The translations under genes and the position numbers were made by a program. Shown piece by piece: positions 18,571 through 49,560 of a DNA stretch of 64,000 bases (position 1 is the stretch's first letter; every line of letters starts with the position of its first letter). Source of the DNA: Mytilus californianus (taxonomy: Eukaryota); assembly GCF_021869535.1 (NCBI RefSeq), contig NW_026262604.1:10106001-10170000 (forward strand). Direction: 5' to 3'. The notes under the pieces are model-generated. The model was not told the DNA's origin, did not search any database, and worked only from the letters and a program-made list of their open reading frames with translations.

Positions 18571-20022
18571 TTTGTTATAGCTATTAGTATCAAGGACGAA
18601 TTTAGTCACAACACAAATATACCAATCAGCATTAATCACCTTTTGTAAAAGTAGGCAACCTCTAACCAAACACAGCAGTGTTAATGTTGATGTTTACTTC
18701 AGCTAAATGTTACAAGTAAAGTTTCTTAATAGAAACAAACATACAAATGCATCTGTGTGATATGTGATAAGAGACTTTCTGTTTTGAAATTTCACTCGGA
18801 GTTCGGTAATTTATGTTGTTTTCCTAACTTATTTTGTGCATCAATATCTGAGTTTTAAGTTCTGTTGTCTTTTTTCGCTCAGCTTTGAAATTAATGGTTT
18901 TCTTTTCCTTGATTGAAAGAAGGAATAAAATAATATAGAGGCAGTCTCAAACCATGGTCGAAGAAAAACAGATGACAGCATGACCATGGCGAAAAAGTAA
19001 GACTGACAAACACATCTTCTTAAAACACTATACAGAATTGTGTGAACAATACATAAACCAGTATGGTGATTACAGTTGGTTATGAAGGTTATTCAATCTT
19101 AATTAATCTGAATTATTAATTTTCAGTCATATTTAATAAAACAACTAACAAAGTATATTATAATGGGTTAACATTAAAAGGAATTCGCCGGATTTGACAT
19201 TGAAAAGCAGGGTTCGACACTAACGCTAGTCCGCTAGCCCGAGGCTAGTAAAAATTGGGGAGGGCTAGTAAAGTTTCTATCACAGTAGTCCGACGGGCTA
19301 GTCAAAATTTGTTTAAAACTAGGAATTTCACAAAATTTTAATTGTCAACAAATCCCAGATTTTTTGCTGACCTTTGCTGTCTTTATTGTACAGTTTATTC
19401 ACGTATATATTGATTGTCAGACATTTTTTAACATGAAAGGTACTTTTTGGGGAGGGGAAAGAAACGGAAACAATGATTGTACTTAATACATTGAAAACCA
19501 CGTGTGTTACAAACGCCGTGATGATTCTAATCAGAAACCTGGATCTCAAAAGTGCTTTCATAATATCAAAATAATAACATGAATACGAAATTTACATGTA
19601 TACATTACTACCGATACCATCACTGTTTGGGAAAAATGACATGTACAACTTATTGGGAGGAATTTTAATCCATTTTTTTTAGTAATTGGGAATTTTCTCT
19701 AGGGGAAAAAGCTGTATTTCGAATGTAATTTGAGGCAAACAATATCACTGAATTATTGTCATAAAAGCAAAATTATAGGTCTCTGCAAGGATTTGTATAC
19801 TATACAATTCCTTGGTCTCTGGTAAAAATATACAGATTTTTAGGAATAAAATCTTGTCTTGCAAAAAAAAATAAACTGAAACAACAAGGGAAAAGAAGGA
19901 GTCCATGAAGAATATGACAAAAAACAGCAAGGGCAAACCTTTCCTCTTTTGTGGGTGTATTTTTAAATCCCTAACTTATCCATCTTCATTAAAGACACTA
20001 GTAATAATGATAAGTAATGGAA

Positions 20023-20754
20023 TGTCAAAGATACGCTGAAACCTGAGTTACTATCTTTTATTGCAGACCTCCAGAGAGGGTAAAAAACTGAAAATATACA
20101 AAGATGAAATCTAATAAGCACAATGTTCACAATCGACAATGTTCACAAAATAATGGTACAATTAATATCAACAATGTTCTCCATACATTGAAAAATATGT
20201 CTATCTTATGAAACAACCAAAAAATGATCAAAAAGTGCCATAGAATTACATCTTAGATAACAAAATTATAACACGAAAAGCGTTCCATACACATACTGTT
20301 TTAAGAAAAAATGTACGCCGAAATATATGGCTGTAATGGCGTTCCATACAAAAAATATTTTGACAAACTGACGGAGTAATATCAAAAATCGAGAATTAAG
20401 AAGCTTAAATTGACTAGGACTGGTTTATAATAAATACAGGAATAAAAATAACCATCATATAAACATCGGAATGCTTAATTTAACATGTAAAATCCAAAAT
20501 AAGTGTGACATGAGATATGACTCCTGAGAATCGTTTGAAATCACAATTAAATTCAAAAGGACTGACCTTAGACTTTAAATACGTATATCGGACATACAAA
20601 TGAAGGTTATAAACTACAGTATAACAAAAAACTCACCCCGTGGAGGGTTGAATACCAAAGAAAAGTTTGTTTATCTTTGCCGTGTGGCAGACATCAAAAA
20701 TAAAATTCGAAATAATGACGGACAGATCCGTAATTTCCGGAGTGTGACATAACA
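20023..20754 (-). repeat. Candidate 3' LTR of the BEL/Pao element
   Basis: On the - strand a purine tract AGAGGGGGAG directly precedes TGTT at 20754; AATAAA near 20060 is followed by a TGACA end at 20023. No second LTR is available, so the distal boundary is inferred. Confidence 0.55.
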
Positions 20755-20896
20755 CTCCCCCTCTGATTTCAAAACTGAAATCACCAATATATAAACAAAT
20801 TTGAAAATAACATGAACAAATTATCAATGCAAAATGTTATAAAATGTTCTGACTATCCGAAGATTCAACGAGTTAAAATTATAATCATTAATCTGT

Positions 20897-21111
20897 TTAA
20901 CTTTGTTTTAGTTCCACATGCTCTACCAACATTACTAGTTCGTTGATTGGTCTAACATAACTAACTGCTTTCCCATCACGCACAACACGAATTTGAACCT
21001 TTTTGACTTTCTGATCAAAACTAGGGAATGTCTTTTCAACAATTGCGACTGGCCAATAGTTGCGAGCACATTCACGGTCTCTTAAGAGTACTAACTCGCC
21101 TTCCTTCATAT
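20897..21111 (-). pseudogene. pol: BEL/Pao pol C-terminal segment downstream of integrase
   Basis: MKEGELVLLRD...NYWPVAIVEKTFPSFDQKVKKVQIRV...YVRPINELVML matches the BEL/Pao terminal motif GDxVLxxD..WPLxxVxxxxPxxDGxVRxVx..RPI. Confidence 0.88.
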
Positions 21112-22201
21112 TGTTACGATTTAGTAATCGTATGATTAAATTAATGGATCTCGTGTTGTCCGTAATTTATAGTAGTAATTTTACGAATCAGCTGTTTTGT
21201 TTACGCTTTTACATCGCTGTTTTTTTACGATGGGATTTCACCTCGTACAGAATATTTACGGTTGGTTGGCAGGTACGTTTATGATAGATGATGTGGGAAT
21301 GTGTTTACCTTTTTAACTTACTTATTTTCTTAATATAATAACTTGTGTTTTAGGCGTAATCATCTAAATTCCAACAGTGCCATAATCTATTTACTCGAGC
21401 AGCCATATTAGTTGTGTATTGGCGGTTTATTACACGAGATTGCTTGTTTACATAACAAACGTTTTGATTGGTTGATCTACTGACCCAAAAATTATAAATA
21501 GAAGGTTGATGAAACGAACTTCAGAATTATTCTCATCGTCTGCAAGAGCAGTCACAAAATTAGCTTAGTCGTTTCCATTTTAGTCAACCTGATTTATTAT
21601 AAATATGTCTGAGCCACAGTCAACCTTAAGTCTGGTACGCAGGTTTTAAATGTTTTAAGAAAACTAAACCTTCTGCACATGGCTGTTGTTTGTTTTGCAT
21701 AAGTCAACCTTCAACCTATGGGAAAGTCCCGTCAACCGTTGTTCCACTTAGTCAACCTTCTATCGTTATGATAATAGGAGAGAGGTTTTCTGGAAATCTA
21801 CTTTCATTTTAGCGGAAAGAAATAATATATATATGAATAATTTATTAAATCAACCCTTATAAGTATTTTATACTATCGGCAAAAGAAGGTTGAAAAGTTC
21901 AACCTTCTTCCAAATCAACCTACGGAAACAATCAACCTTAGTGGAATTTCAAGTCAACCTTCCTGACCAATAAATTATAAATGATTACGGCATGTTGTAT
22001 ATCAATATAAATGTATAGCTTGTGATGAATTGTAAATATTTGATTATATAGATGCTACATAAAGTACATCTGAAAGTTATACCTGACTTAGTTATTATTT
22101 CAACTTTATACCAACTCAAAGGATCCATGCAAATTATGTTCGATCGAGCCTCCTTATTCAATTTAACCTACCACTCGGTGTAAAGGGGCGAAATCGTTAC
22201 A
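21112..22201 (+). repeat. Gypsy 5' LTR
   Basis: tgttacgat...aatcgttaca; colinear with 29941-31030 at constant offset 8829, about 14 substitutions counted by eye. Confidence 0.97.
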
Positions 22202-22202
22202 C

Positions 22203-22222
22203 TGGTGTCAGAAGTAGGATTC
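22203..22222 (+). promoter_or_regulatory. Primer-binding site, tRNA-Leu type
   Basis: TGGTGTCAGAAGTAGGATTC one base after the LTR; complementary to the eukaryotic tRNA-Leu 3' end ...CCCACUUCUGACACCA (tRNA sequence from memory). Confidence 0.85.
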
Positions 22223-22366
22223 TATTTAACTTTGAATTTGGTGGTTGAAATGATTATTAAAAATTATACTGAAAAAGCTTTAGTATATTTGATTGATGTT
22301 AAACTGTTTCACTAAATTTTTATAAAAATCTAAATTGAATTAGAAATATCAAAATTTTAGTACATT

Positions 22367-23920
22367 ATGGATGATTCTGGAGAAGTAATTATAGCTATTA
22401 ATCATTCTTTCCAAGAGGAAAATGATGGGGAAATAACCATTCCTTTAGATGAACAGAAGGTTGATAGTGTTGACTGTGCAGAGCAGACAATAAGCCATGA
22501 CAAAGAACAATATTTATTTGTTAATGAATTAAAAAACCTTAAAAGTTTATTCCATGACCAATTAGGGGAGATAACCCATGATTTCTCTAATTGTCAAAAA
22601 GAAGTTATCTGTGCTGTAAATCAGATAAAAAGAGATTTTGAAGATGAAATTTCTTCTATTAAAGGTCGTATAAGCCAAATTGAAGATGATGTACATGAAA
22701 ACAAGAAAAATATTTCTACCATTTATAAAATGATGGAACAAAATAAAGATTTAGTAAATCACAGTAATCACATGAGTGACATGGTAAACACTGAAAACAT
22801 ATCTGAAGTGATATCAGGTGTTGGGCAAGCAGTTCCTGGTGCAAATATTAAGACAAATCAAAATACAGAAAAACAACATCAAAACACAGATAATATTTAT
22901 TTATTTAATAAAGACAAAATGTGTAATGTAAATCAAAACTATGCTGTACTGGATAGACCTCTAGTTCCAAGATTGACCAATTCCCATATCCATTCACCCA
23001 AGTCTAGTAATGTAACCATGAAGCCACAGTTGTATGAGGGAGATGAAGATTTAAATGAATATTTAGCTCAATTTGAAATTTTAGCTGAAATAAATGGTTG
23101 GAATTATGCAACCAAATCATTATATTTGGCTGGTAGTTTAAAAGGGAGAGCAAGAGCTCTGTTAAATGAACTAGATAAAGAGTCTAGAAAAGATTATGAT
23201 AGTTTGGTTAAAGTTTTGGACAATAGATATGGTTCAGCTGAAAAATCCGAATTATTTAGAGCAAAACTCCAGACCCGTATGAAAGGGAAAGAAGAAAGTT
23301 TACCAGAGTTAGCTCAGTCAATTAAGAAATTGACTAGGCAAGCTTATCCAAGTGCCCCATCCACAATAACTAGTGTATTAGCACTAGAACATTTCATTGA
23401 TGCTTTACCAGATGCTGATCTGAGACTAAGACTTAGGGAGTCTAACCCTAAATCTATACATGAAGCAGAAACACTAGCTGTAAGATTAGAGACCTTAAAG
23501 TTAGCGGAGAGACAAAAAGGGCGCATGGTTAGACAGGCAGATACAGTTCATAATGAGAATAATACAATTAATACAGAGTTGAACAATGACAAGGGGGAGG
23601 ATTTTAAATCATTAAGGCACGAGTTGTCTGATTTTAAGAAGGAACTGGTATCTTTAACTAGAGATATTAAGGGTATGTCCCAAAACCAGAATAGGAATAG
23701 CCAAGGGGGAGGTAATCAACAGAGGAATTATCAAAATAGCCAGAGAGGATATAATAACCAGAATAAGAATTTTGTTCAGGGAAACAGATATTTTAATCAA
23801 AGAAATAATAATTTTGGTCAAAGTAGGCAGAATCAACCTAATTACTATCAACAGGGAAACCATTTGAGGTCAGACTCAGGGATCGGAGCCAGGCCAAGTC
23901 AGAATGGCCCAAATCGATAA
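22367..23920 (+). CDS. gag: Gypsy Gag, 517 aa, uninterrupted
   Basis: Capsid-type segment KPQLYEGDEDLNEYLAQFEILAEINGW...LAGSLKGRA...RMKGKEESLPELA...EHFIDAL; N-terminal heptad-rich region; Q/N-rich C-terminus. Confidence 0.92.
   Translation: MDDSGEVIIAINHSFQEENDGEITIPLDEQKVDSVDCAEQTISHDKEQYLFVNELKNLKSLFHDQLGEITHDFSNCQKEVICAVNQIKRDFEDEISSIKGRISQIEDDVHENKKNISTIYKMMEQNKDLVNHSNHMSDMVNTENISEVISGVGQAVPGANIKTNQNTEKQHQNTDNIYLFNKDKMCNVNQNYAVLDRPLVPRLTNSHIHSPKSSNVTMKPQLYEGDEDLNEYLAQFEILAEINGWNYATKSLYLAGSLKGRARALLNELDKESRKDYDSLVKVLDNRYGSAEKSELFRAKLQTRMKGKEESLPELAQSIKKLTRQAYPSAPSTITSVLALEHFIDALPDADLRLRLRESNPKSIHEAETLAVRLETLKLAERQKGRMVRQADTVHNENNTINTELNNDKGEDFKSLRHELSDFKKELVSLTRDIKGMSQNQNRNSQGGGNQQRNYQNSQRGYNNQNKNFVQGNRYFNQRNNNFGQSRQNQPNYYQQGNHLRSDSGIGARPSQNGPNR
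23854..23860 (+). promoter_or_regulatory. -1 ribosomal frameshift slippery heptamer G GGA AAC (gag to pol)
   Basis: Correctly phased X XXY YYZ in the gag frame; the -1 frame from 23860 is open (PFEVRLRDRSQAKSEWPKSIKINESL) into the protease LVDTGA motif. Confidence 0.8.
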
Positions 23921-26900
23921 AGATCAATGAATCTTTGGCAAATAATGAGGAACTATTTGTAAGAGCTAATTTAGCTTTTCTTGTTGATACAGGAGCAAAT
24001 GTTACTATTTTGAGTAAAAAATTTATTAATGAAATCAATCCCTCATTACTTCCAAAAATGAATCCTGTAAATATTAATTTAATTACTGCTACTGGTGATA
24101 GTGCACCATTTATAGGACATGTTGATGTTGAAATTTGTCTTGGAGATCATATTTATCACCACAATGTTTAAGTGGCTGATATTTCCAATGAAGGAATCAT
24201 TGGGATGGATTTTCTTGTGACTCATGACTGTGATGTCTTGTTAAGTCAAAATAAGTTGAAAATTAAAGGGGAGATAATTCAATGTTTTCATTATGCAAGT
24301 AGTGCTAAATCTTGTTATAGAGTTGCTATACAAGAGACAGTAAATGTGCCTCCTAATTCAGAAATGATTGTTTCTGGGGAGCCAAATGAACCTATTTTTA
24401 GAGGTTTAGCTGGTTTAATAGAACCTAAAGAGAAATTTATGGAGAAAAATGGTTTATTGGTGGCAAGATCAATTGTACATCCAGAGATGTATAATATTCC
24501 TTTGAGAATAATAAATATAAATAATGAGCCCTGTACTTTATATAAGGGTACAATTATTGCTACCTGCAATAAAGTAAATGAAGAAGATATTCAAACATCT
24601 GAGTTTGTTAATAATGTGGCTGGTGGCCAAGCTACAATAAATAAGGGGAGACAATCACCTGATTATTTACATGAAGTATTTGAGTCTAGTCAAGTTAATC
24701 TTGATAAAGATCAAAGTGAAAAATTTAAAGACCTTTTAATGGAGTATAGTAATATATTCTCAAAGTCCTCTGAGGACATTGGTTTAACTGATTTAGTTGA
24801 ACATACCATAAATACTGGAAATCACCCTCCAGTACGTCAGCGACCCAGACGAATACCCCTAGCTAGAATGAAAGATGCTGAAGCTGAAATTCAGAAAATG
24901 GTTCAGCAAGATATTATAGAACCCTCTACAAGTCCCTGGAACTCCAATATTGTTCTCGTGAAGAAGTCAGATGACAGTTGGAGGTTCTGTATTGATTTTC
25001 GGTCCGTAAATTTACTGGTTTTACGTCCATCCTACCCGTTACCTCGTATAGATGACACAATAGATTCATTGTCAGGCTCCAAGTTCTTCTCAACCGTCGA
25101 TTTAAAGTCAGGATATTATCAGATTCCTGTAGCCAAAGAAGATAGACCGAAAACAGCCTTTTCATTTCCAGGAGAAGGTCTCTGGCAGTTCAAAAGAATG
25201 CCAATGGGTCTATGTAATAGTGCCCCTGTTTTTGAAAGATTAATGGAAGCAGTTTTATCAGGGTTGACCTGGAAAATTTGTCTAGTTTATCTAGATGATA
25301 TTATTATTTTCCTAAAAATCATTTGAGGAGCATATGAAAAACTTAAAAGAAGTTTTTCAAAGATTAAAAGCAGCTAATTTAAAGCTGAATCCCAAGAAAT
25401 GTAACTTTTTAAAGACAGAAGTTAAATTTTTAGGTCACATTGTTAGCGAAAGTGGAGTAGCTACTGACCCAAATAAAATTCAGTCAGTTAAGGACTGGCC
25501 AGTGCCCAAGAGTATGAAAGATGTAAGAAGTTTTCTAGGATTAACATCCTATTATAGAAAATTTATTCTAAAATATGCTGATAAAGCTAAACCTTTATAT
25601 AAGGTTACTGAGAAAAACCAGAAATTTGTCTGGACAGATGATTGTTAACAATCCTTTGAGGAATTAAAGAATACCTTAATTAGTGCACCTATTTTAGCCT
25701 ACCCCACAAGGGAGGATTTATTTATATTAGACACTGACGCAAGTAATGTTGGTATGGGAGCAGTGCTATCCCAACTCCAAGATGGAGTAGAAAAAGTAAT
25801 TTGTTACTTTAGTAAAACTTTCAGTAGATCAGAGAGAAAATATTGTGTTACCAGAAGAGAGCTACTAGCTGTAGTAGCCTCTATTAAACATTTTCACCAT
25901 TATTTATATGGTAAATACTTCAAGGTTAGAAGTGACCATGGTGCATTAAGTTGGTTGTTTAATTTTAAGAATCCAGAAGGTCAGTTAGCTCGTTGGTTCG
26001 AGGTCCTAGCATCCTATGATTTTAAGATTGAGCACAGAGCTGGAAGGTCCCATAATAATGCAGACGCCCTAAGTCGACGTCCTTGCTATAATAAAGAATG
26101 TCCTCACTGTGCTAGAGCAGAAATAAATTATGAATTGATTCCAACTCATAAAGACAGTTTTACAGTTGAAAATTGTAACGATAGTGTCACTGTTAGTGAA
26201 TCTTGCAGAAATGTTCAAGATGTCAGTGCAGAGTTGTCAGTTACAAAACCTAGTATTAGCTGTATAAATGAAGATAGGAGACCAAACATGACAAGTGACG
26301 AAACGTGCCACAAAGTAAAAAGTCATGTCATTCATAATAAATTTAATAGTAAGGGTCCAGAGAAAAACCCTGATGTACTCCCTGTTCATTCTAAAATAGT
26401 AAGAGTTTGTACCAGATCTAAGGATTATTGTTGTAGTCAAAATGAGAAGGACAACCCAGTTAAAGAAATAAATTTTGAAAATGTTTCAGAATCTCAGTTA
26501 TCTGATGATGTAATCAGTATAATTATTCAGTGGAAAATAGATGAAGTTAAACCCACATGGGCAGATGTATCCCATATGAGTCCTGAAGTTAAATTTTATT
26601 GGTCAAGATTAAATCCTTTAATTCTTGTCAATGGAATTTTATATAGAAAATGGGAAAGCTATAATGAAAAACATTATGATCTACATATTGTTCTTCCAGC
26701 TAATTTTAAAAGGTTCGTGTTGAACCAAGTTCATAACACAGTGACCGGTGGTCATCTTGGTGTAAGAAAAACTCTGTCAAAAATTAAACAGAGATATTTT
26801 TGGTATAAAATGAGACAGGATGTTAAATTTTGGTGTACTAAATGTGATATTTGTGCTTCTAAGAAAGCACCTTGTAAAAAACCTAAGGCCCAAATGAAAC

Positions 26901-27793
26901 AGTATCTTGTGGGTGCTCCTTTTGAAAGAATGGCCATTGACATTCTAGGACCTTTACCATGTAGTGTGAATAATAATCGCTATCTAATGGTAGTTCAGGA
27001 TTATTTTTCCAAATGGACGGAAGCCATACCAATTCCAGACACTGAAGCAGTTACAGTTGCTAAGAAATTTGTAGAAAGAATAGTAACCATTTTTTGGGTT
27101 CCTCTTTCTATTCACTCAGACCAAGGGTCTAATTTTGAGTCTCATGTGTTTAAAGAGATGTGTAATATTTTGGGTATTCATAAAACCCGTACAACACCAT
27201 TCCGGCCAAAATCGGATGGTATGGTTGAAAAGTCGAATTCAACTATTGAAACTATGTTATCTGCCTTTGTAAGCAAACACCAAAGAGATTGGGACGAATA
27301 TATTTATTTATTAATGTTGGCCTATCGGTCATCAGAACATGAGAGTTTGGGTACATCTCCATGTTCCTAGTTATTTTGAAGAGAAGTTAATTTACCAGTA
27401 GATTTAATTCTGGGTAGACCAGAGACTGAAAAGTCACCTTTATATTTAAAAACTGTTTATGCATATGAATTATCTCAAAAGTTAGAGGTAATTCATCAAT
27501 TTGCACGAAATAAATTAAAACTGTCAAGCGACAGGATGAAAAGAAATTATGACATTTCAACAAAAATGCAGAAATTTGATGCAGGAGATCCAGTGTGGTT
27601 GCACAATCCTCGTCGTGTAAAGGGGTTGTGTCCAAAATTACAAAATAATTGGGAAGGTCCATATATTGTGGTAAATAAACCTAATGATGTGATATATCGT
27701 ATACAGAAAGGTCCAAAGACCAAACCTAAAGTAGTGCACCAAGACAGGTTGAAGCCCTATCTTGGGGAAAATGTTCCAAGTTGGTTTAAATAG
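23860..27793 (+). pseudogene. pol: Gypsy Pol (protease, RT, RNase H, integrase with GPY/F tail), disrupted
   Basis: LVDTGA; WRFCIDFR, DLKSGYYQI, MPMGLCN, YLDD; LDTDAS, ELLAVV, SDH; HHCC, D(ILGP)-D(QGSNFE)-E(KSN); WEGPY. Lesions: stops ending at 24171, 25648, 27370 and about 27379, and a frameshift near 25315. Confidence 0.95.
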
Positions 27794-27931
27794 ATATGAT
27801 GGAAATGAGGGAAGTGAAACCCTAAAATTCCATATATCTATCCAGTATAGTACAGTTTTTGGTTATTTTATAGAAATATATAAAATCAAATAGCGAGATT
27901 TTAAAGGAAATGTTCCTTTTTATAATTGCAG

Positions 27932-29390
27932 GTCACAGTATATACCTGTGGAATTTGCCATGATTTCACTTTCAACCAGTCAATAATATGCAAAAGGCAT
28001 ATGACAGAACAACATAGTGGGTTTGGTTGGAGGTGTGAGGAATGTAGGTTGGTGGTAAGCCGTAGAGCTGCCCACAAGAAGTGTGAGGGAATGTTGAAGT
28101 TAATCAACAGGACCACAATGACTTGTACCAAAGAGGAGGAGGATCAGTTCCTTCTGTTCCAAAGACAGAGAGAGGAAAAGATGATAACGTGAGAAAGTGG
28201 ACAAGGAAGAAAAAAAGGAGCTGCAGAAAGATAGCAAAAAGAGGTCTCACAGGAAGGAACAGGACCAGGGGACAAAGAAGCAGAGGACAGTACTTGGGAA
28301 CTTGTATGTGGAGAATAATATAGTATTTGGGGATGGAGGGGAGAAAAAGAAGAAGGAAGTTAAGAAGGTGCAGGAGAAGAAGAGAACACCAGAGGAAGAA
28401 AGGGAGAGAAAGGAGAAGAGGGATGAAAAAAAGAGAAGGAAGGAAGAAAAAGAAGTGGAGAAGGAGAGTAAGAAAGTAAAAGAGGATGAGACGGAGAAGA
28501 AGAAAGAAGAAAAGGAGATGAAGAAGGAGGAGAGGGCAAGTAAGAAAGAGGATGAGAAGCTAAAGGAGAACAGGAAGGAGTCGGTGCAAAAGCAGAAAGA
28601 GGTACTTTCTAATTTATGGAAGGAGATGGAGAATTCCTCAGTGGGAAGTCTTGAGGAAGTTTCACTATGTGATCCGGAGGAGGATGCTTTTTTGGATGAT
28701 ATTGTAGGTTTCACTTCGGTAGTGGAACCTATTTCTCCTCTGCCAAGTGATCCCTGCAAGACCAGCCCCGATCCTGATATGCCATATACAGACATCCCTG
28801 TTATAACCGTCCCCGATATTGATACAGCCATCCCTAGTATTGATGTCTCTGTTGTGGAACTACCATCATTGGAACCACCCCTCACCTCCACTAGTTTATG
28901 TATCCCGTTAGCTACACAGCCTTGTCCAACCTATTCCCCTACTCAGGAACTCCTCTCCCCATCTGAATTGAGAAAGGCTGCTGCCATTTACACCCCTACC
29001 CAAGTGAAGAAATTAAAGTTGGAGCAAATACAAAAGAGCCAGCAATCCCGTTTTTTTATAAATGTTGGTGGAACCAGATTTGAAACCTCAGCCACAGTTT
29101 TTCAGTCCTGTCCAGAGTCCATATTATCTGCAATGATCAAGGAAGACTCTCTTGTAAAGCCTTATATTTTTGATGGGCGCCATACCTATTTTTTGGATCG
29201 TGATGCCAAACATTTCCCCCTCATCTTAAATTATTTAAGGAACCAGGCCCGGACCCATTCTGAAATGCTTCCCAGAGATATACGCAGTTTACGGGAGTTG
29301 CAGGTGGAATGCAACTTCTATGAATTGAGACACCTGGAACTCGCCGTCCAAAAGAAGATCTTGGACCTGCAGCAACTCAGCTTGATTTAG
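27932..29390 (+). CDS. Gypsy ORF3: zinc-finger-like N-terminus, K/E-rich stalk, P/S/T-rich linker, C-terminal KCTD-type BTB/POZ (T1) domain; one frameshift near 28185-28197
   Basis: 28197-29390 is open for 397 aa and ends in FINVGGTRFETSATVFQSCPESILSAM...YFLDRDAKHFPLILNYLR...LP...LRELQVECNFYEL. The upstream 27932-28192 segment has C-x2-C-x13-H-x4-H and C-x2-C-x9-H-x2-C and joins after a one-base correction. Confidence 0.85.
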
Positions 29391-29925
29391 GAATGAAAAT
29401 TGGGCAGTGGATTTTATTAGGACAATTTATTTTAAAGGATCATGTGACGAACATTGGGGGGCGGATATTATATATATATGTGTGTGTTACTTAAATAATT
29501 CTATTATGCATAATGATGATAGGTATTCTTAATGCAGTACAGTATTACCTTAGAAAAGCCCTATGATGTCTTTATGACTGATGAAGTATATTTTATCCTT
29601 TTCTTTTCTCAGGTTTTACTGTCCAGTATTGGCTTATTTATTCACATATAGTAGAAGTATTGTTTATTAATTTGTTATATATTTATGGATTTTATATCCA
29701 TTGATAGTGCTATTGCAGATTTGTTGTTGAATTTGCATAACCCATTTACTGGTATGTGAATAGATGAGTTTTAAGTTAGAGTGTACAGGATGAATTTGTA
29801 TTGTAACAGTAAGACAGTTTTGTCTTATTAAATTTTGTTTTCCCATTTTCAGCCAACCAACCAATTAATTGATTAATTTAATACATGTATAGATGGAAAT
29901 CTGTGCATTTGAGGACAATCGCCTA

Positions 29926-29940
29926 GTGGTCGGAGGGCTG
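29926..29940 (+). promoter_or_regulatory. Imperfect polypurine tract before the 3' LTR
   Basis: agtggtcggagggctg immediately precedes the LTR TGT; G-rich but not purely purine. Confidence 0.5.
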
Positions 29941-31030
29941 TGTTACGATTTAGTAATCGTATGATTAAATTAATGGATCTCGTGTTGTCCGTAATTTATA
30001 GTAGTAATTTTACGAATCAGCTGTTTTGTTTACGCTTTTACATCGCTGTTTTTTTACGATGGAATTTCACCTCGTACAGAATATTTACGGTTGGTTGGCA
30101 GGTACGTTTATGATAGATGATTTGGGAATGTGTTTACCTTTTTAACTTACTTATTTTCTTAATATAATAACTTGTGTTTTAGCCGTAATCATCTAAATTC
30201 CAACAGTGCCATAATCTATTTACTCGAGCAGCCATATTAGTTGTGTATTGGCGGTTTATTACACGAGATTGCTTGTTTACATAACAAACGTTTTGATTGG
30301 TTGATCTACTGACCCAAAAATTATAAATAGAAGGTTGATGAAACGAACTGCAGAATTATTCTCATCGTCTGCAAGAGCAGTCACAAAATTAGCTTAGTCG
30401 TTTCCATTTTAGTCAACCTGGTTTATTATAAATATGTCTGGCCCACAGTCAACCTTAAGTCTGGTACGCAGGTTTTAAATGTTTTAAGAAAACTAAACCT
30501 TCTGCACATGGCTGTTGTTTGTTTTGCAAAGGTCAACCTTCAACCTATGGGAAAGTCCCGTCAACCGTTGTTCCACTTAGTCAACCTTCTATCGTTATGA
30601 TAATAGGAGAGAGGTTTTCTGGAAATCTACTTTCATTTTAGCGGAAAGAAATAATATATATATGAATAATTTATTAAATCAACCCTTATAAGTATTTTAT
30701 ACTATCGGCAAAAGAAGGTTGAAAAGTTCAACCTTCTTCCAAATCAACCTACGGAAACAATCAACCTTATTGGAATTTCAAGTCAACCTTCCTGACCTAT
30801 AAATTATAAATGATTACGGCATGTTGTATATAAATATAAATGTATAGCTTGTGATGAATTGTAAATATTTGATTATATAGATGCTACATAAAGTACATCT
30901 GAAAGTTATACCTGACTTAGTTATTATTTCAACTTTATACCATCTCAAAGGATCCATGCAAATTATGTTCGATCGAGCCTCCTTATTCAATTTAACCTAC
31001 CACTCGGTTTAAAGGGGCGAAATCGTTACA
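29941..31030 (+). repeat. Gypsy 3' LTR
   Basis: Direct repeat of 21112-22201, followed by the ATAT TSD. Confidence 0.97.
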
Positions 31031-31955
31031 ATATTACTGTATTCACTGGTCCATTTTTGTCGAGTTTGTAGACGGTTTAAATATTTGTTACGCCAGCGGT
31101 TCCAAAACTCTTCTGCTAGAACCTGAGTGTGCTTTCATAGAGATTTCAACATGTCTTTATTTCCGAATGTTGGAAACGATACATTGTCCTGATTTATTTT
31201 ATGTGTGAGAAGCATTGCTGGACAAAGTACACATGGTGATTCTGGGTCAGTTGACTCCGGGACCAAAGGTCTCGCATTTACAATTGCTGTTACCTCCGAT
31301 AACAGGGTAGTAGGTACTTCATGAGTAAGAGTTTTTGAACCTTCTCGTAGTAACATAGAATCTAAAATCTTTCGTGAAACACCAATCATCCTTTCCCACA
31401 CTCCTCCCATGTGGGAGGCGTGTGGAGGATTAAAATGCAACAAGACGTCGTTGTTTGAGAGAAAACTTCTCACAGAGTCTTTTTCAACAAATTCAGTGAT
31501 CATATTTAGCTCTTTTGAACTGCCAACAAAGTTTGTTCCCCTAGCAGAACAGAACTGCTTAACTTCACCCCTTAAGGCAATGAAACGACGCAACGCATTT
31601 ATAAATGAAGCACTGCTGAGCTCCTCTATGACCTCTATATGAATTGCTCTGCTGACGAGGCATGTGAACATAAGTGCCTATCTTTTCTGATTAGCTGGTA
31701 TGCCACGAGTGCGTCTATAAGCTATTGGCCATGGGCCAAAGGTGTCAACACCGACGAATGTAAATGGCGGTGATGGTTTTAATCTGTCCTCAGGCAAATC
31801 TGCCATTTGCTGCCAACCGAAACAACCACGAAGCTTACGACATATCACACATTTATGAAGCACTGAAGAAACTAAACGACGACTGCCTAAAATCCAAAAA
31901 CCAGCTGTACGGATAGCACCATCTGTGAGGCTTCTGCCTTGATGAGCCACTTTTA
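31031..31955 (-). pseudogene. pol: BEL/Pao integrase (zinc-binding region plus catalytic core) with two in-frame stops
   Basis: HQG...CVICRKLRG, LPEDR..PSPPFTFVGVDTFGP, MFTCLVSRAIHIEV, FNPPHASHMGGVWERMIG; stops at KR*ALMF (31678-31680) and KSL*KH (31135-31137). Confidence 0.92.
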
Positions 31956-32851: not shown

Positions 32852-34180
32852 TTAACCCATGGATGTTTACTAGAGTGAGCCTACGTACCGTCTGAAAAGA
32901 TTCGTCACAAAGTAAATTTTGTTCGAGTTGTTTTTTCAAAAATATGATTGAAAATCGTCCGACGGTCACGAAGGTGAATGACCGCCATTTTGTACACAAC
33001 AACACTGATTGAAGGGAGACAACACCATCTGTTATTTTGAATTCCCATTTGCAACGCTGGAGCATACTATCATTCAGCTTGTGTCATAAAAAATAATTTT
33101 CTAACATTTTAGACTCCTTCAAAAGTGTTTAATATCAACATTAAACAAACTTTAAGACTTACAAAATTTTCAGTCTGGTTTTCAATTACATCTGAGACCT
33201 TGTCTGCCTGAGTAAACAGCTACTGTCCTTCACAAAAAATCATTTATAAAAAAAATGTCAATGTATTTAATGTTTTTTCCATCCATTTTCTAAAAAGTTT
33301 AACAACAAAACTGTCAACTATAGTCATAAATTCGGAACAAAATTCAAAAAACAGAACATCAAATATACTGGTCTCAATTATAGCAGTTCCTCTCTGTGTG
33401 GTATTTTGAGAAACACTCAGGCAGACACAGGTGTTTATTACATTCCAAACATCCTAACTTATTCTGCTTGATAGGAACCTGGGGATTATTTCGGTGTCTC
33501 ATATAGCAGAGATGGCACTTAGATTTTTTTTCAAAGGAGGCCGGCATGTGACGTTGAACAAGACGGTTCTCAACAGGCATAAGTGATGGTCTTCCTCTAC
33601 GGGTCTCAGAAATATAACCATAAACCAACCCCTTGGCTACAGAAATGGATAAGTCCAGGAATGTCAGATTTGTTTGGTGGTTGGTACTCATGAGAAACAG
33701 TTTGAAAGCATTAAATTTAGCCATTTCCATGAGCACAAAGAAAACTCTTTTGCTCCACTTGTAGGTTTTGTGGTTGTAGCAATAATACTGAATGTATTGA
33801 TCAGCATGATCAACACCACCCATGTTACATGTGTAGTCAGCTACTGCCTTAGGACATTCAAAATTTTGTCTAGTGAAAGTTCCATCATTATTGACGAGCC
33901 TTTTAACTTGTGAAGTTGAATGGTCATGGATTGTTGAAACAGTGTACACATTTTTTTTTGTCACGCCAAACGGTAGCAACTAAAGATCCCTTCTGCCTGA
34001 ATTTCATGCCTCCACGGAGGTTGATAACAGAAGGTTTTTTACACATTATGTCCTTAGGTAACCAGATTGTATCTGACTGTACCACAGGCATAGGTACCAA
34101 AGTTTTCATAAAGATTAGCAAACAACTCAGGACTGGTGAAAAAATTATCTGTATAAAGATGGTACCCTTTACCTACTAAA
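32852..34180 (-). mobile_element. piggyBac transposase C-terminal half plus probable element end, frameshifted
   Basis: KGYHLYTDNFFTSPELF...YACGTVR (about 34070-34180), VWRDKK, MGGVDHADQ, KW.KRVFF and C-terminal CHLC...CLEC..HLC..ECF..YH; TTAA|CCC end motif at 32852. Confidence 0.85.
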
Positions 34181-35070: not shown

Positions 35071-35567
35071 GTGGCCAAAGGAAAGCCTTTTTCAGAATAA
35101 AAGTAATGACAACACTGGAGTAACATCGCAAGATCTAAACCTTTTCATTTTCTAGAATTCTTAATAAACTCTTAATCTAAATAATACCCTGTTTTAGATG
35201 GATTAGGCTTATTTTTTAATGTCCTTTTTGGTAAGATAGCTCTTTAACTGTTTCGGTTCTTGTACATCCTTGGCTTTCAAATATTAGGCTTTGAGCGTTC
35301 CTGATGAAGGTAAATCCAGAAAAGCGCATAGAATGCATAAAATTGATAACGTGTTGTTTTAATTTTTTAGTGTTTACTATACTATTCAAATTAACAGAGT
35401 TCTCAAAAAGTGGTGGTCCGAAGGTTTTGACCAACAAAAATTGCAAAGGACCGACACAATTTTGGTATTTTGCAATAGAACCAATAATGAGGACCAGCAG
35501 ATTTTCTTCAAGGACCACCAGAGAAAAATAGATTTCGAGAACTCGGACTATTTATGGACCAACTGTT

Positions 35568-36150
35568 ATGATTTCATACTTTATACTTGACATGTATATT
35601 AACCAACACCAGAGGGTGTGTCATAATGTTTGTACATCTCCTAGGTCAAACATTAAGGTCAAAAACTTAAGTTTCAGTTGACAACCCCATGTCCTATGGT
35701 ACAGATCATGTGTGCTCTATATCTTGAGAAACGTTATGATTTCAAAGTTATACTTGACATGAATGTTAACCAACACCAGAGGGTGTGTCATAATGTTTGT
35801 ACAACTTCCTAGGTGAAAGTTCAAGAACTTTGGTTTCAGTTGACAACCAAATGTCCTATGGTAAAGATCCTGTCCGCTGTATATCTTGAGAATCGTTATG
35901 ATTTCAAAGTTTATACTTGACATGTATATTTACCAACACCAGAGGGTGTGTCATAATGTTTGTACATCTCCTAGGTCAAATATTAAGGTCAAAAACTTAA
36001 GTTTCAGTTGACAACCCCATGTCCTATGGTACAGATCATGTGTGCTCTATATCTTGAGAAACGTTATGATTTCAAAGTTATACTTGACATGAATGTTAAC
36101 CAACACTAGAGGTTGTGTCATAATGTATGTTCAACTTCCTAGGCCAAATA
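35568..36150. repeat. Satellite-like array of alternating 168/162-bp monomers (A-B-A-partial B)
   Basis: Unit starts (atgatttca) at 35568, 35736, 35898 and 36066; units 1 and 3 share gtacatctcctaggtcaaa, units 2 and 4 share caacttcctagg. Confidence 0.88.
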
Positions 36151-37077
36151 TAATTCTTTAACTAAAAAACATAGAATAAAATCACTCTCAGCACATAACG
36201 AGACTATCTAATAACTTAAAAAAGTGCTTCATATCAGCTTATCCATACAAATGTTTTACCACACGTTATTTACAGCGGGGCCCACAGAGATTGCTCCCAT
36301 CTCAATGACGTCTACTTTTTTTTCTGTTTGCATTGTGATCGTCTACAAATAGAAACGTGTATCCTTAAGGAGAATTTCGGCGTCTACACCGGTGTGCCAA
36401 AAGATAATTTCGGCATGCGCACGATGGTGCCAAAAGGGCACAACATTCGGTTTTAATATCTAAGTCATTTTTTAAAGAAACTTCATAGAAAGCAATACTG
36501 AATTTATTAACCCCCCCCTTTTCCAAAAAAAAAGAGAAAAAAAAAGAACATCAAATTTTCCCTAGCTTATCTTGGCTTATTCTTAATACACAAAAGGAAT
36601 GTGACTAATATGTACTTCTAAACTATTAAGTCTTTTCACTTTCAAATCATATAGATTAGAAATACAATTTACATATAATATCATATTTCATAATGAAACA
36701 GATAAACAAAAACAAAAAAGAAATTTGAAATGAAAAATGAAAGACTTTTATTTCAATACCAAACTTTGAGACAACCCAGAAAATACCAGATTCTTATATT
36801 TTTCAAAATTGGTCAACAAATAAACTGTTTTTACATAAAATATATGCAACACACTGAAGGTGTTTGTAATGCCAGTCATACCTATTTTTTACATATATAT
36901 TAACAATAACAAGTAACTAATTAGAAATGACTCCCAGAAAAAAAAAACTGGTGAAGAGTTGTTAAAACCAATGGTTAAAGGCTGAGTGCACACTGTACAG
37001 CGTTAACGATTCTCAAAAATATAGTTTTTTCTACTTCTAATTTATTTTTCTCAAATGTTCCTCAAACAGTAAATTTA

Positions 37078-48828: not shown

Positions 48829-49560
48829 GTGTTCTGCTATTTACAATCCAAAGAAAACCAATCGCTGCGTGATGGCATGGATGCGTTAGAACAATACAGT
48901 CGACGGAACTTAATTCGTATCAACGGCATTCCTGACGGTGGTATAGATGAATCTTCCATTCAAACAAACGAGTTAGTCAAAGATCTTATCAAAACCATCG
49001 ATGAACAACTAAAACCCGAAGACATCATTCGATCTCATAGAATTGGTAAACCACGCACAAGGGAAGGCAATGAAGACGGCCGAGTTAACAACAAGTTTCA
49101 GCCTCCTAGACAAATAATTGTCAAGATTAAGGATCATAATGTTAAAAAGAGGATCCTCAGATGCAGAAAATTCTTAAAAGGGAAAATAGAATACAAGTAC
49201 GTCAGAATGAATGAGGACCTGACCAAGCCGAGAAACGCCATTGCATACAAAGCCAGACAGCTCAGCATTGAGCATCATCTAAGAGACACGTGGACAGTTG
49301 ATGGGAAAATTTATGTAAAGGACAATCAAATGCAAGTCCATGTTGTCAACACAATGCCAGCGTTCCTACGTTTTGTATCGATATACTGCTGTCCTGGTTC
49401 CATGGACTTCCTTGATAGGCTAGACTACAACAACAAACAAAACAGACGCGAGTACACACCACCACAACTCATAACATATGCGGAAGCACGAGCGAAGGAA
49501 TTAGCAGAGAGAGCATCTTCAAATGCATCAGCTGAAAACACGAGTGTCCAAATTTCATGA
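48829..49560 (+). CDS. LINE ORF1p, RRM/CTD-type nucleic-acid chaperone, N-terminus likely missing
   Basis: LEQYSRRNLIRINGIPD, SHRIGK, PRQIIVK, MNEDLT, WTVDGKIYVK motifs typical of invertebrate LINE ORF1; the ORF track start is TTG. Confidence 0.85.
   Translation: MFCYLQSKENQSLRDGMDALEQYSRRNLIRINGIPDGGIDESSIQTNELVKDLIKTIDEQLKPEDIIRSHRIGKPRTREGNEDGRVNNKFQPPRQIIVKIKDHNVKKRILRCRKFLKGKIEYKYVRMNEDLTKPRNAIAYKARQLSIEHHLRDTWTVDGKIYVKDNQMQVHVVNTMPAFLRFVSIYCCPGSMDFLDRLDYNNKQNRREYTPPQLITYAEARAKELAERASSNASAENTSVQIS

What the first reader, a model, noticed from the sequence alone, without database searches (positions are those of the whole stretch)
28197..29390. Gypsy retrotransposon carrying a KCTD-type BTB domain as an accessory gene in the env position
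Between the pol stop (27793) and the 3' LTR, and therefore inside the TSD-bounded element, lies a 397-aa open frame. Its last ~110 aa (about 29049-29370) match the KCTD/Kv-channel T1 BTB signature: INVGGTRFET, PESILSAM, YFLDRDAKHFPLILNYLR, LP, ECNFYEL. The domain is preceded by a long K/E-rich stalk and a P/S/T-rich linker, and there is no env-like signal peptide or TM segment. Established: many KCTD BTB domains oligomerise and recruit Cullin-3 to form E3 ligases, and poxviruses use BTB proteins to hijack CUL3. I do not know of BTB cargo as a standard Gypsy feature, but I cannot search. Inference: a retroelement-encoded CUL3 adaptor or decoy that could counter host silencing. Some annotated KCTD expansions in bivalves might be such cargo.
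Basis: partly seen in the sequence, partly recalled or inferred. Interest (0 to 1): 0.9.

Follow-up and report, generated by a model that had tools for sequence, protein, structure and literature searches.

The report
Mussel Gypsy element's zinc-finger–BTB gene
A dead copy of a mussel Gypsy retrotransposon carries, where retroviruses keep env, a third gene for a protein with two DNA-type zinc fingers and a KCTD-like BTB assembly domain. The gene is conserved and under selection in related elements of mussels, scallops and oysters, where it is often mis-annotated as a host potassium-channel-type gene.

Summary
An LTR-bounded Ty3/Gypsy element (21112-31030) has an open frame between pol and the 3' LTR whose C-terminus is a BTB_2/T1 domain (Pfam E=2e-16; AlphaFold pLDDT 97; best PDB folds are KCTD1/13/15/10).

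ORF3 starts about 27932 with two C2H2-type zinc fingers, and in this copy one frameshift interrupts it. Pol is also dead (about 7 stops and 1 frameshift).

ORF3 is not a one-off capture. The same IN -> zinc finger -> linker -> C-terminal BTB order occurs inside LTR pairs in four Mytilus species, Pecten, Pinctada, Crassostrea and two unnamed marine assemblies, with pol only 45-50% identical. Both domains are under strong purifying selection (omega 0.02-0.13).

A conserved splice-acceptor signature precedes ORF3. A RefSeq model in a sister family splices an LTR-borne first exon onto it.

Most likely ORF3 is a BTB-assembled oligomer that binds nucleic acid through its zinc fingers. It is weakened by the absence of a KCTD-style substrate domain and by the closest sequence relatives being KCTD1 and KCTD15, which do not bind cullin 3.

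I found no published description. I rate it a new variant of a known kind (accessory ORF3 of LTR retrotransposons).

The parts
21108..21111 (+). Target-site duplication, left copy (ATAT)
   Evidence: Same 4 bases directly flank both LTR ends. This is weak on its own in AT-rich DNA.
21112..22201 (+). 5' LTR (1090 bp, TG..CA)
   Evidence: Direct repeat with 29941-31030, 14 mismatches in 1090.
22203..22220 (+). Primer-binding-site-like TGG... stretch, one base after the 5' LTR
   Evidence: Read from the sequence. Not matched to a tRNA here.
22367..23920 (+). gag (517-codon open frame, uninterrupted)
   Evidence: ORF list. Weak SCAN / Retrotrans_gag hits. Colinear with the 509-aa gag of the M. edulis copy, with no stops or frame changes.
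22385..22390 (+). Candidate 5' splice donor after gag codon 6 (inference only)
   Evidence: A GT in phase 0 that matches the phase of the ORF3 acceptor. It is identical in three copies, but that stretch is coding anyway. A donor inside the LTR, as in the sister family, is equally possible.
23935..27793 (+). pol (PR-RT-RNaseH-IN, ending in an Integrase_p58_C / SH3 domain). Broken: about 7 in-frame stops and 1 frameshift relative to the intact 1289-aa pol of the M. edulis copy.
   Evidence: Pfam RVT_1, RT_RNaseH, Integrase_H2C2, rve and Integrase_p58_C on the pieces. Break count. The start coordinate is approximate.
27903..27931 (+). Conserved polypyrimidine tract ending in TTGCAG: putative 3' splice acceptor of the ORF3 mRNA
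   Evidence: A block identical in 4 Mytilus copies inside an otherwise variable spacer. The same Y-tract + CAG lies a few codons before the first Cys in the Pecten, TARA, ENA, Pinctada and Crassostrea elements. The RefSeq model in the sister family uses the equivalent site.
27932..29390 (+). ORF3 (zinc fingers - linker - BTB). In this copy it is interrupted by 1 frameshift and has no ATG of its own at its 5' end.
   Evidence: Two open pieces in different frames that are contiguous in relatives P0006, P0003 and P0011.
27947..28084 (+). Tandem zinc fingers (C2H2, then a C2HC variant)
   Evidence: Invariant C, C, H, H, C, C, C across 8 elements. A profile of them hits tandem C2H2 DNA-binding fingers in the PDB: Aart 2e-9, CTCF 2e-8, ZBTB20 2e-7. 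Single-sequence Pfam hits are sub-threshold.
28200..28600 (+). K/E-rich charged stretch (lineage-specific low-complexity linker)
   Evidence: Composition. It is replaced by P/S/A-rich or other linkers in relatives. omega is 0.07-1.4.
28650..29050 (+). P/S/T-rich linker
   Evidence: Composition. omega is 0.15-0.4.
29058..29339 (+). BTB_2 (T1/KCTD-type) domain, followed only by a short terminal helix
   Evidence: Pfam E=2.2e-16. AlphaFold2 on 28980-29387 gave pLDDT 97.1. Foldseek finds KCTD1/13/15/10/16/5 BTB domains with target TM 0.8-0.88.
29391..29927 (+). Non-coding spacer between ORF3 and the polypurine tract
   Evidence: No ORF. 95% identical to the M. coruscus copy.
29928..29940 (+). Purine-rich tract abutting the 3' LTR (PPT-like)
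   Evidence: Read from the sequence.
29941..31030 (+). 3' LTR
31031..31034 (+). Target-site duplication, right copy (ATAT)

Best explanation
What is shown (about 0.95). The window holds a decayed insertion of a Mytilus Ty3/Gypsy family. Its third gene, between pol and the 3' LTR, encodes two N-terminal C2H2-type zinc fingers, a fast-evolving low-complexity linker, and a C-terminal T1/KCTD-type BTB domain. This ORF3 is an old, selected gene of a whole lineage of bivalve Gypsy elements. It is not a recent host-gene capture.

Expression (inferred, about 0.7). ORF3 is translated from a spliced subgenomic mRNA. An upstream exon, in the LTR/leader or at the very start of gag, supplies the ATG and joins a conserved acceptor a few codons before the first zinc-finger cysteine.

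Mechanism (inferred, about 0.55). The BTB domain assembles the protein into a tetramer or pentamer, as T1/KCTD BTB domains do. That displays 8-10 zinc fingers, giving multivalent binding of nucleic acid, DNA more likely than RNA. The protein would then act in the nucleus as an element-encoded regulator or tether. It could act on the element's own LTR or chromatin, keeping it transcribed or insulated, or on target DNA during integration. CUL3 recruitment by the BTB is compatible with this but is not required.
For: Architecture:
- BTB_2 at E=2e-16. AlphaFold2 pLDDT 97 with KCTD BTB folds as the best PDB matches.
- The zinc-finger profile hits CTCF, ZBTB and Zif268-type tandem fingers at E=2e-9 to 1e-5.
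- Invariant Cys/His ligands in 8 elements.

Family trait:
- The same order, IN -> ZnF -> BTB on one strand, occurs in M. californianus, M. coruscus, M. edulis and M. galloprovincialis.
- It also occurs in Pecten maximus, where gag, pol and a 507-codon ORF3 frame (503-aa protein) are all open and the LTRs are 99.4% identical.
- It occurs in Pinctada imbricata and Crassostrea angulata, in a TARA scaffold and in two elements of an ENA assembly.
- LTR pairs enclosing the gene were found for the window copy, the Pecten, Pinctada and Crassostrea copies, both ENA elements and the M. californianus sister family.
- Pol identity to the window is only 45-55% in these distant elements.

Control: 80 metagenome loci with ordinary BTB_2 genes have no pol nearby.

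Selection: omega is 0.02-0.05 for the zinc fingers and 0.04-0.13 for the BTB in all 10 pairs of 5 copies, with Fisher p down to 1e-43.

Single origin: in an NJ tree, one clade of 123 leaves holds 35 of 38 ZnF-type proteins and all 84 proteins with a C-terminal BTB. It holds 0 of 52 multi-BTB proteins and 2 of 52 metagenome BTBs.

Splicing:
- A conserved acceptor block.
- 3 of 4 Mytilus copies lack an ATG at the ORF3 start.
- RefSeq XP_052068568.1 in a sister family has an 8-codon first exon inside the 5' LTR, a 6.3-kb intron over gag-pol, and an acceptor 4 codons before the first Cys. It occurs at two independent insertions.
Against: - Nothing here shows binding of DNA, RNA or any protein. Two fingers alone give little specificity, and C2H2 fingers can also bind RNA or proteins.
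- Oligomeric state was not modelled.
- None of the five sampled copies of the window's own family was seen to have an uninterrupted ORF3. The window, L001 and L005 copies are visibly interrupted; L002 and L086 were seen only in separate pieces and were not examined further. Two M. edulis gene models share one BTB lesion, so a BTB-defective variant may have spread, perhaps complemented in trans.
- The RefSeq splice model is a prediction whose RNA support I could not inspect, and it belongs to a sister family.
- The donor for the window's family is not identified.
Confidence: 0.55

Rival explanations
1. ORF3 is a retroelement-encoded CUL3 substrate adaptor or a CUL3 decoy. BTB oligomers dock cullin 3, and the N-terminal part brings in a host restriction or silencing factor for ubiquitination, or the protein titrates CUL3.
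For: KCTD BTB proteins commonly assemble cullin-3 ligases (PMC7618933). Fold matches include the CUL3 adaptors KCTD13, KCTD10 and KCTD5. Strong purifying selection on the BTB fits a conserved host partner. BTB proteins are common in large DNA viruses.
Against: KCTD adaptors use a C-terminal domain after the BTB for substrates (PMC7618933). Here the BTB is terminal. The best sequence matches are KCTD15 and KCTD1, which do not bind cullin 3 (PMC7618933). The conserved partner domain is a DNA-type zinc-finger pair, not a known protein-recognition module.
Confidence: 0.25
2. ORF3 is not a separate protein. It is a spliced C-terminal extension of integrase (a Pol-ORF3 fusion) and acts as an integration-targeting module, as chromodomains do in chromoviruses.
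For: Gene models in M. coruscus and M. edulis join the integrase C-terminus to the ORF3 zinc fingers through the same acceptor (P0013, P0028, P0175). A GT in phase 0 sits near the end of IN. Two elements of two different ORF3 families lie inside arrays of the same 68-bp satellite.
Against: Those models are automatic predictions. The donor is a poor match to the consensus and lies in coding sequence that is conserved anyway. The RefSeq model in the sister family uses an LTR exon instead. Six other Mytilus loci and the window are not in that satellite.
Confidence: 0.12
3. ORF3 is an RNA-binding accessory protein for export, packaging or translation control of the element's own RNA. The BTB domain provides multimerisation on the RNA.
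For: It is expressed like retroviral accessory genes from a spliced message. C2H2 and C2HC fingers can bind RNA (general knowledge). The linkers are basic and K/E-rich.
Against: The finger profile matches classical DNA-binding tandem fingers best. No RNA element conserved across families was sought or found.
Confidence: 0.1
4. One-off capture of a host KCTD exon or retrogene, or a host gene that merely lies between two solo LTRs, now decaying neutrally.
For: This copy's ORF3 is broken and lacks its own ATG. GC3 of the ORF3 domains (0.43-0.55) differs from pol (0.26).
Against: The gene sits at the same position in at least 12 elements from at least 8 named species and 2 unnamed samples. omega is far below 1. 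No host KCTD shared enough words to appear in the word-based search.
Confidence: 0.02

Closest known systems
KCTD family BTB domains (KCTD1/KCTD15, KCTD13/10, KCTD5) and Kv-channel T1 domains
   Same: Same Pfam family (BTB_2). Same fold: target TM 0.8-0.88, rmsd about 2 A, 24-30% identity. Homo-oligomerisation is therefore expected.
   Different: In KCTD proteins the BTB is N-terminal and is followed by a substrate- or partner-binding C-terminal domain. Here it is the last domain of the protein, preceded by zinc fingers, and it is encoded by a retrotransposon.
BTB-zinc-finger (ZBTB/POK) transcription factors and CTCF-type finger proteins
   Same: An oligomerising BTB combined with Krueppel-type C2H2 fingers. 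The ORF3 finger profile hits CTCF, ZBTB20, ZBTB7A and HIC2 fingers.
   Different: The domain order is reversed. There are only two fingers. The BTB is of the T1/KCTD type, not the PF00651 type. It is not a host gene.
Non-env ORF3 genes of LTR retrotransposons (for example GDSL lipase and DEDDy exonuclease ORF3s of bdelloid rotifer elements, PMC5408684) and errantivirus env
   Same: A third gene between pol and the 3' LTR that is family-specific and thought to be expressed from spliced messages (PMC5408684).
   Different: Neither a BTB nor a zinc-finger-BTB ORF3 is mentioned in that paper or in the mollusc LTR and metazoan env surveys I searched. There are no membrane or enzymatic features here.
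BTB proteins of large DNA viruses (pandoraviruses, mimiviruses, poxvirus BTB-kelch)
   Same: A virus-encoded BTB fold.
   Different: Those are DNA viruses with different architectures (BTB-kelch, BTB alone). No retroelement protein appeared among the viral fold matches.
KCTD1 isoform b (Crypton recombinase-derived domain + BTB; PMC3212892)
   Same: A KCTD-type BTB and a transposon-derived module in one protein.
   Different: The direction of events is the opposite. There, a host KCTD gene absorbed a transposon domain. Here, a transposon carries the BTB.

Membership tests
Ty3/Gypsy (Metaviridae) LTR retrotransposon | Two near-identical LTRs with TG..CA ends and a short target-site duplication | tested here: met
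   1090-bp LTRs, 98.7% identical, with a 4-bp ATAT flank on both sides. The TSD is weak evidence in AT-rich DNA.
Ty3/Gypsy (Metaviridae) LTR retrotransposon | pol domain order PR-RT-RNaseH-IN | tested here: met
   RVT_1, RT_RNaseH, Integrase_H2C2, rve and Integrase_p58_C in that order on the pol pieces. An intact 1289-aa pol occurs in the M. edulis copy.
Ty3/Gypsy (Metaviridae) LTR retrotransposon | PBS after the 5' LTR and PPT before the 3' LTR | tested here: inconclusive
   A TGG... stretch and a purine-rich tract are at the right places. No tRNA match was attempted.
BTB_2 / T1-KCTD domain family | Sequence match above the curated Pfam threshold | tested here: met
   60.4 bits against a cut-off of 21.4. 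All 52 relatives scanned also match.
BTB_2 / T1-KCTD domain family | T1-type BTB fold | tested here: met
   AlphaFold2 pLDDT 97.1. Foldseek top hits are KCTD1/13/15/10/16/5 BTB domains.
BTB_2 / T1-KCTD domain family | Homo-tetramer or homo-pentamer formation | not testable with these tools
   Only a monomer could be predicted.
KCTD proteins (cullin-3 substrate adaptors) | N-terminal BTB followed by a C-terminal substrate-recognition domain | tested here: not met
   The BTB ends about 15 residues before the stop. 132 of 176 related proteins have the BTB within 40 residues of the C-terminus.
KCTD proteins (cullin-3 substrate adaptors) | Binding of cullin 3 | not testable with these tools
   Not all KCTDs bind CUL3 (PMC7618933). 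No complex prediction was available.
ZBTB / BTB-ZF transcription factors | N-terminal PF00651-type BTB with a C-terminal C2H2 array | tested here: not met
   The order is reversed and the BTB is of the BTB_2 type. Only 6 of 52 relatives also touch PF00651.
C2H2 zinc fingers | C-x2-C ... H-x3-5-H ligand pattern and a match to finger profiles | tested here: met
   Ligands are invariant in 8 elements. The profile hits PDB tandem fingers at E=2e-9. Single-sequence Pfam hits stay below threshold, and the second finger is a C2HC variant.
Retroviral / errantiviral env | Signal peptide, transmembrane anchor, fusion-protein homology | tested here: not met
   Maximum hydropathy 1.27. No env family in Pfam. 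No env-like viral fold match.
Accessory ORF3 of LTR retrotransposons expressed from a spliced mRNA | Position between pol and the 3' LTR, shared by family members | tested here: met
Accessory ORF3 of LTR retrotransposons expressed from a spliced mRNA | Evidence of splicing | tested here: inconclusive
   The acceptor signature is conserved across divergent elements. A RefSeq model exists in a sister family. No RNA reads could be examined.

The most novel reading that the evidence does not exclude
A clade of bivalve Gypsy elements, apparently descended from one acquisition, encodes its own oligomeric zinc-finger-BTB factor. The factor either recruits cullin 3 to destroy a host restriction or silencing protein (a Vif-like strategy in a retrotransposon), or acts as an element-encoded insulator or targeting protein that reads repeated DNA such as the 68-bp satellite. 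The unusually deep synonymous divergence of its two domains would then reflect old ORF3 allelic lineages kept by conflict with the host.
Probability: 0.2. Interest if true: 0.9.

Novelty: new variant of a known kind. Interest (0 to 1): 0.68.

Why it matters
- Accessory genes are what turn simple retrotransposons into 'complex' retroelements, and outside env very few kinds are known. A conserved, selected zinc-finger-BTB gene across mussel, scallop and oyster Gypsy elements adds a new kind. It points to either host-factor manipulation or self-encoded chromatin or targeting control.
- There is a practical consequence. Bivalve gene sets contain dozens of 'BTB/KCTD/potassium-channel regulatory' models that are retrotransposon ORF3s. 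This inflates reported gene-family expansions and presence/absence variation.
- The question becomes testable with public RNA-seq, small-RNA and proteome data.

Tried and rejected
- No second copy of the element or of ORF3 exists in the window.
- The first metagenome scan, with P0011 alone, found nothing. Profile A3 was too divergent for that tool.
- The second scan returned 80 BTB_2 loci, none linked to pol. They were useful only as a control.
- The first AlphaFold run, with 8 sequences, was poor (pLDDT 62). It was replaced by a 109-sequence alignment.
- I took a Crassostrea short-read contig (L093) for a spliced transcript. Its two gaps relative to the genome lack GT-AG and have microhomology, so it is no RNA evidence.
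- L087 is only a decayed ORF3 fragment without pol.
- The hyper-editing explanation for the high ORF3 divergence is rejected: there is no A>G or G>A excess.
- The bacterial promoter/terminator scan is irrelevant for this eukaryotic element.
- The profile word search for wider taxa was saturated and added only Argopecten.
- Seven literature searches and targeted reads found no description of a BTB-bearing LTR retrotransposon.
- I did not build or search a joined-exon model of the window's ORF3. Its two pieces were searched apart.
Full report
**1. Observation**

The window contains one LTR retrotransposon at 21112-31030.
- The two 1090-bp LTRs differ at 14 positions, start with TG and end with CA, and are flanked by ATAT on both sides.
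- Between them lie an open 517-codon gag and a pol whose pieces carry RVT_1, RNase H, Integrase_H2C2, rve and Integrase_p58_C in Gypsy order.
Its residues 288-381 match Pfam BTB_2 at E=2.2e-16.
- The composition claims (K/E-rich, then P/S/T-rich, no hydrophobic segment) hold.

**2. State of this copy**

I compared the window with the M. edulis relative, whose gag (509 aa) and pol (a single 1289-aa frame) are open.
- The window's gag is uninterrupted.
- Its pol carries about seven in-frame stops and one frameshift.
- ORF3 is interrupted once by a frameshift and has no ATG at its 5' end.

It is a dead copy of a fairly young insertion (LTR identity 98.7%).

**3.

- Aligned over eight elements, the ligands C, C, H, H, then C, C, (H), C are invariant.
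- A profile of this module hits tandem C2H2 DNA-binding fingers in the PDB: Aart 2e-9, CTCF 2e-8, ZBTB20 2e-7, ZBTB7A, Zif268.
- Single sequences stay below Pfam thresholds.

ORF3 therefore reads: two zinc fingers, a variable linker, then a C-terminal BTB. The linker is K/E-rich plus P/S/T-rich here. It is P/S/A-rich or otherwise different in other subfamilies, so the 'stalk' is not a conserved feature.

**4. The BTB domain**

- With a 109-sequence alignment, AlphaFold2 gives pLDDT 97.1 for 28980-29387.
- Foldseek finds KCTD1, KCTD13, KCTD15, KCTD10, KCTD16 and KCTD5 BTB domains (target TM 0.8-0.88).
- By sequence the best solved relatives are KCTD15 and KCTD1, at about 30% identity.
- In the viral structure library only BTB proteins of giant DNA viruses, and weakly poxvirus kelch proteins, appear. 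No retroelement protein appears.

**5. It is a family and lineage trait**

Close copies:

| Locus | Species | Relation to the window |
|---|---|---|
| L001 | M. californianus | 97% nt over gag-pol-ORF3 |
| L002 | M. coruscus | 93% over pol-ORF3-3' LTR |
| L005 | M. edulis | Full copy |
| L086 | M. galloprovincialis | Same gene order |

All four carry ORF3 at the same place.

Distant elements with pol or integrase only 45-55% identical show the same order on one strand:
- Pecten maximus (L088): LTRs 99.4% identical; gag, a 1277-aa pol and a 507-codon ORF3 frame (503-aa protein) all open.
- Pinctada imbricata (L094) and Crassostrea angulata (L092).
- A second Mytilus family (L090, L091): two independent insertions, 99.4% identical.
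- A TARA scaffold (L003) and two elements of an ENA assembly (L004, L089).
- LTR pairs enclosing the gene were found for the window copy and for L088, L094, L092, L004, L089 and L090/L091.

The exhaustive profile search found 73 clusters at E<=1e-30.
- 132 of 176 related proteins have the BTB at the very C-terminus.
- 38 also keep the zinc-finger core, and all 38 have a single C-terminal BTB.
- In a rough NJ tree these form one clade, apart from multi-BTB proteins and from 52 ordinary BTB_2 genes taken from metagenomes.
- Those 80 metagenome loci have no pol nearby.

Source names include 'putative potassium channel regulatory protein' (Crassostrea), 'KCNC4', 'DNA ligase 1-like', 'trichohyalin-like' and 'Integrase catalytic domain-containing protein'.

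**6. Selection**

I used Nei-Gojobori counts on in-frame pieces only. The results cover all ten pairs of five copies.

| Region | omega |
|---|---|
| Zinc fingers | 0.02-0.05 |
| BTB | 0.04-0.13 |
| P/S/T linker | 0.15-0.4 |
| pol | 0.14-0.6 |

Where dS was not saturated these are the values. Elsewhere dN stayed at or below 0.13 while synonymous sites were saturated. Fisher p values reach 1e-43. The two domains are thus the constrained parts.

**7. Expression**

The spacer between pol and ORF3 is variable, except for a block ending in a polypyrimidine tract and TTGCAG, which is identical in four Mytilus copies.
- Three of those four copies have no ATG at the ORF3 start.
- The same tract plus CAG sits a few codons before the first cysteine in the Pecten, TARA, ENA, Pinctada and Crassostrea elements.
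- In the sister Mytilus family, the RefSeq model XP_052068568.1 has an 8-codon first exon inside the 5' LTR, a canonical GT donor, a 6.3-kb intron over gag and pol, and an acceptor four codons before the first cysteine.
- Other automatic models instead join the integrase C-terminus to the same acceptor (P0013, P0028, P0175).

For the window's family the donor is unknown. A phase-matched GT after gag codon 6 is one candidate. Splicing is an inference, since I could not look at reads.

**8. Mechanism**

*Shown:* the domain architecture, its conservation, and selection on it.

*Inferred from the established behaviour of T1/KCTD BTB domains (PMC7618933):* homo-oligomerisation into tetramers or pentamers.

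*Inferred from the finger matches:* nucleic-acid binding, most likely DNA, made multivalent by the BTB.

I therefore favour, at about 0.55, an element-encoded oligomeric zinc-finger factor. It would act on the element's own LTR or chromatin, or on target DNA.

[quoted passage not shown] Not all bind cullin 3, and KCTD1 and KCTD15 do not (PMC7618933).
- ORF3 has no such C-terminal domain.
- I could not test contact residues.

**9. Novelty**

- Non-env ORF3 genes in LTR retrotransposons are known (PMC5408684).
- A KCTD gene that absorbed a Crypton domain is known (PMC3212892).
- I found no paper combining BTB, retrotransposon, ORF3 and integrase.
- There is no mention of BTB in the mollusc LTR survey, the bivalve transposon survey or the metazoan env-Gypsy study.

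The library is incomplete, and Repbase notes could not be searched. I rate the finding a new variant of a known kind.

**10. Unexplained**

In every pair of copies the synonymous divergence of the two ORF3 domains is 10-40 times that of pol.
- For example, L001 against L002: pol dS 0.046, linker 0.18, fingers 1.8, BTB 1.3.
- It also exceeds the divergence of the LTRs and the non-coding spacer.
- GC3 of the domains is 0.43-0.55 against 0.26 in pol.
- The substitution spectrum shows no editing signature.

Mosaic recombination among old ORF3 lineages is the simplest idea, but it is untested.

The two pieces of the window's ORF3 and the pol pieces were always queried apart.
- The 500 N in locus L088 were left as they are.
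One note writes a hypothetical exon junction in a few residues; it was never used as a query. Several script outputs list match bounds per reading-frame piece in the window's relatives, from which approximate places of frame changes could be read.

Noticed in passing
window 27926-29390 compared with L001, L002, L005, L086: Synonymous divergence of the ORF3 zinc-finger and BTB segments is 10-40 times that of pol in the same pair of copies, and higher than in the LTRs or the non-coding spacer. GC3 is 0.43-0.55 against 0.26 in pol. There is no editing-type substitution bias.
   Followed up: partly
L005:1-3394 and 19915-21371; L090:3689-8723 and 24965-27541: The same 68-bp satellite flanks, on both sides, two ORF3-bearing Gypsy elements of different families in two Mytilus species. 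The window and six other Mytilus loci lack it. This could be a sign of satellite-biased insertion, or the satellite may simply be abundant.
   Followed up: partly
proteins P0006 and P0007 (M. edulis), L005: Two M. edulis gene models share the same lesion in the BTB, while gag and pol of L005 are open. A BTB-defective variant may have been copied, or the locus duplicated.
   Followed up: no
window 50442-53996 (+), with 48829-49560 upstream: An uninterrupted 1184-codon LINE ORF2 (endonuclease + reverse transcriptase), preceded by a 243-codon ORF with no Pfam match that could be its ORF1.
   Followed up: partly
window 33374-33979 (-): A fragment of a piggyBac-type transposase (DDE_Tnp_1_7, C-terminal part only).
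   Followed up: no
window 35565-36151: A 168-bp tandem repeat, 3.5 copies, 85% matches.
   Followed up: no
L005:12306-17918: A BEL/Pao element with an 1870-aa open frame lies less than 1 kb downstream of the M. edulis ORF3, apparently nested in or abutting the Gypsy copy's 3' end.
   Followed up: no
L088:2710-3589: In Pecten maximus a 29-bp tandem array (30 copies) abuts the 5' LTR of the intact ORF3-bearing element.
   Followed up: no
linkers of P0009, P0011, P0014-P0016: A conserved proline-rich motif in the linker of one ORF3 subfamily reads as PPxY in some members, resembling WW-domain or late-domain motifs. It is absent from the window's subfamily.
   Followed up: no
window 28247-28891 (-): A 214-codon antisense open frame over the K/E-rich stretch. 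It is most likely a by-product of the purine-rich repeats and not a gene.
   Followed up: no
L092:12933-15796: In Crassostrea angulata a second, more distant Gypsy pol lies between ORF3 and the downstream LTR-like repeat, so that locus is probably nested.
   Followed up: no
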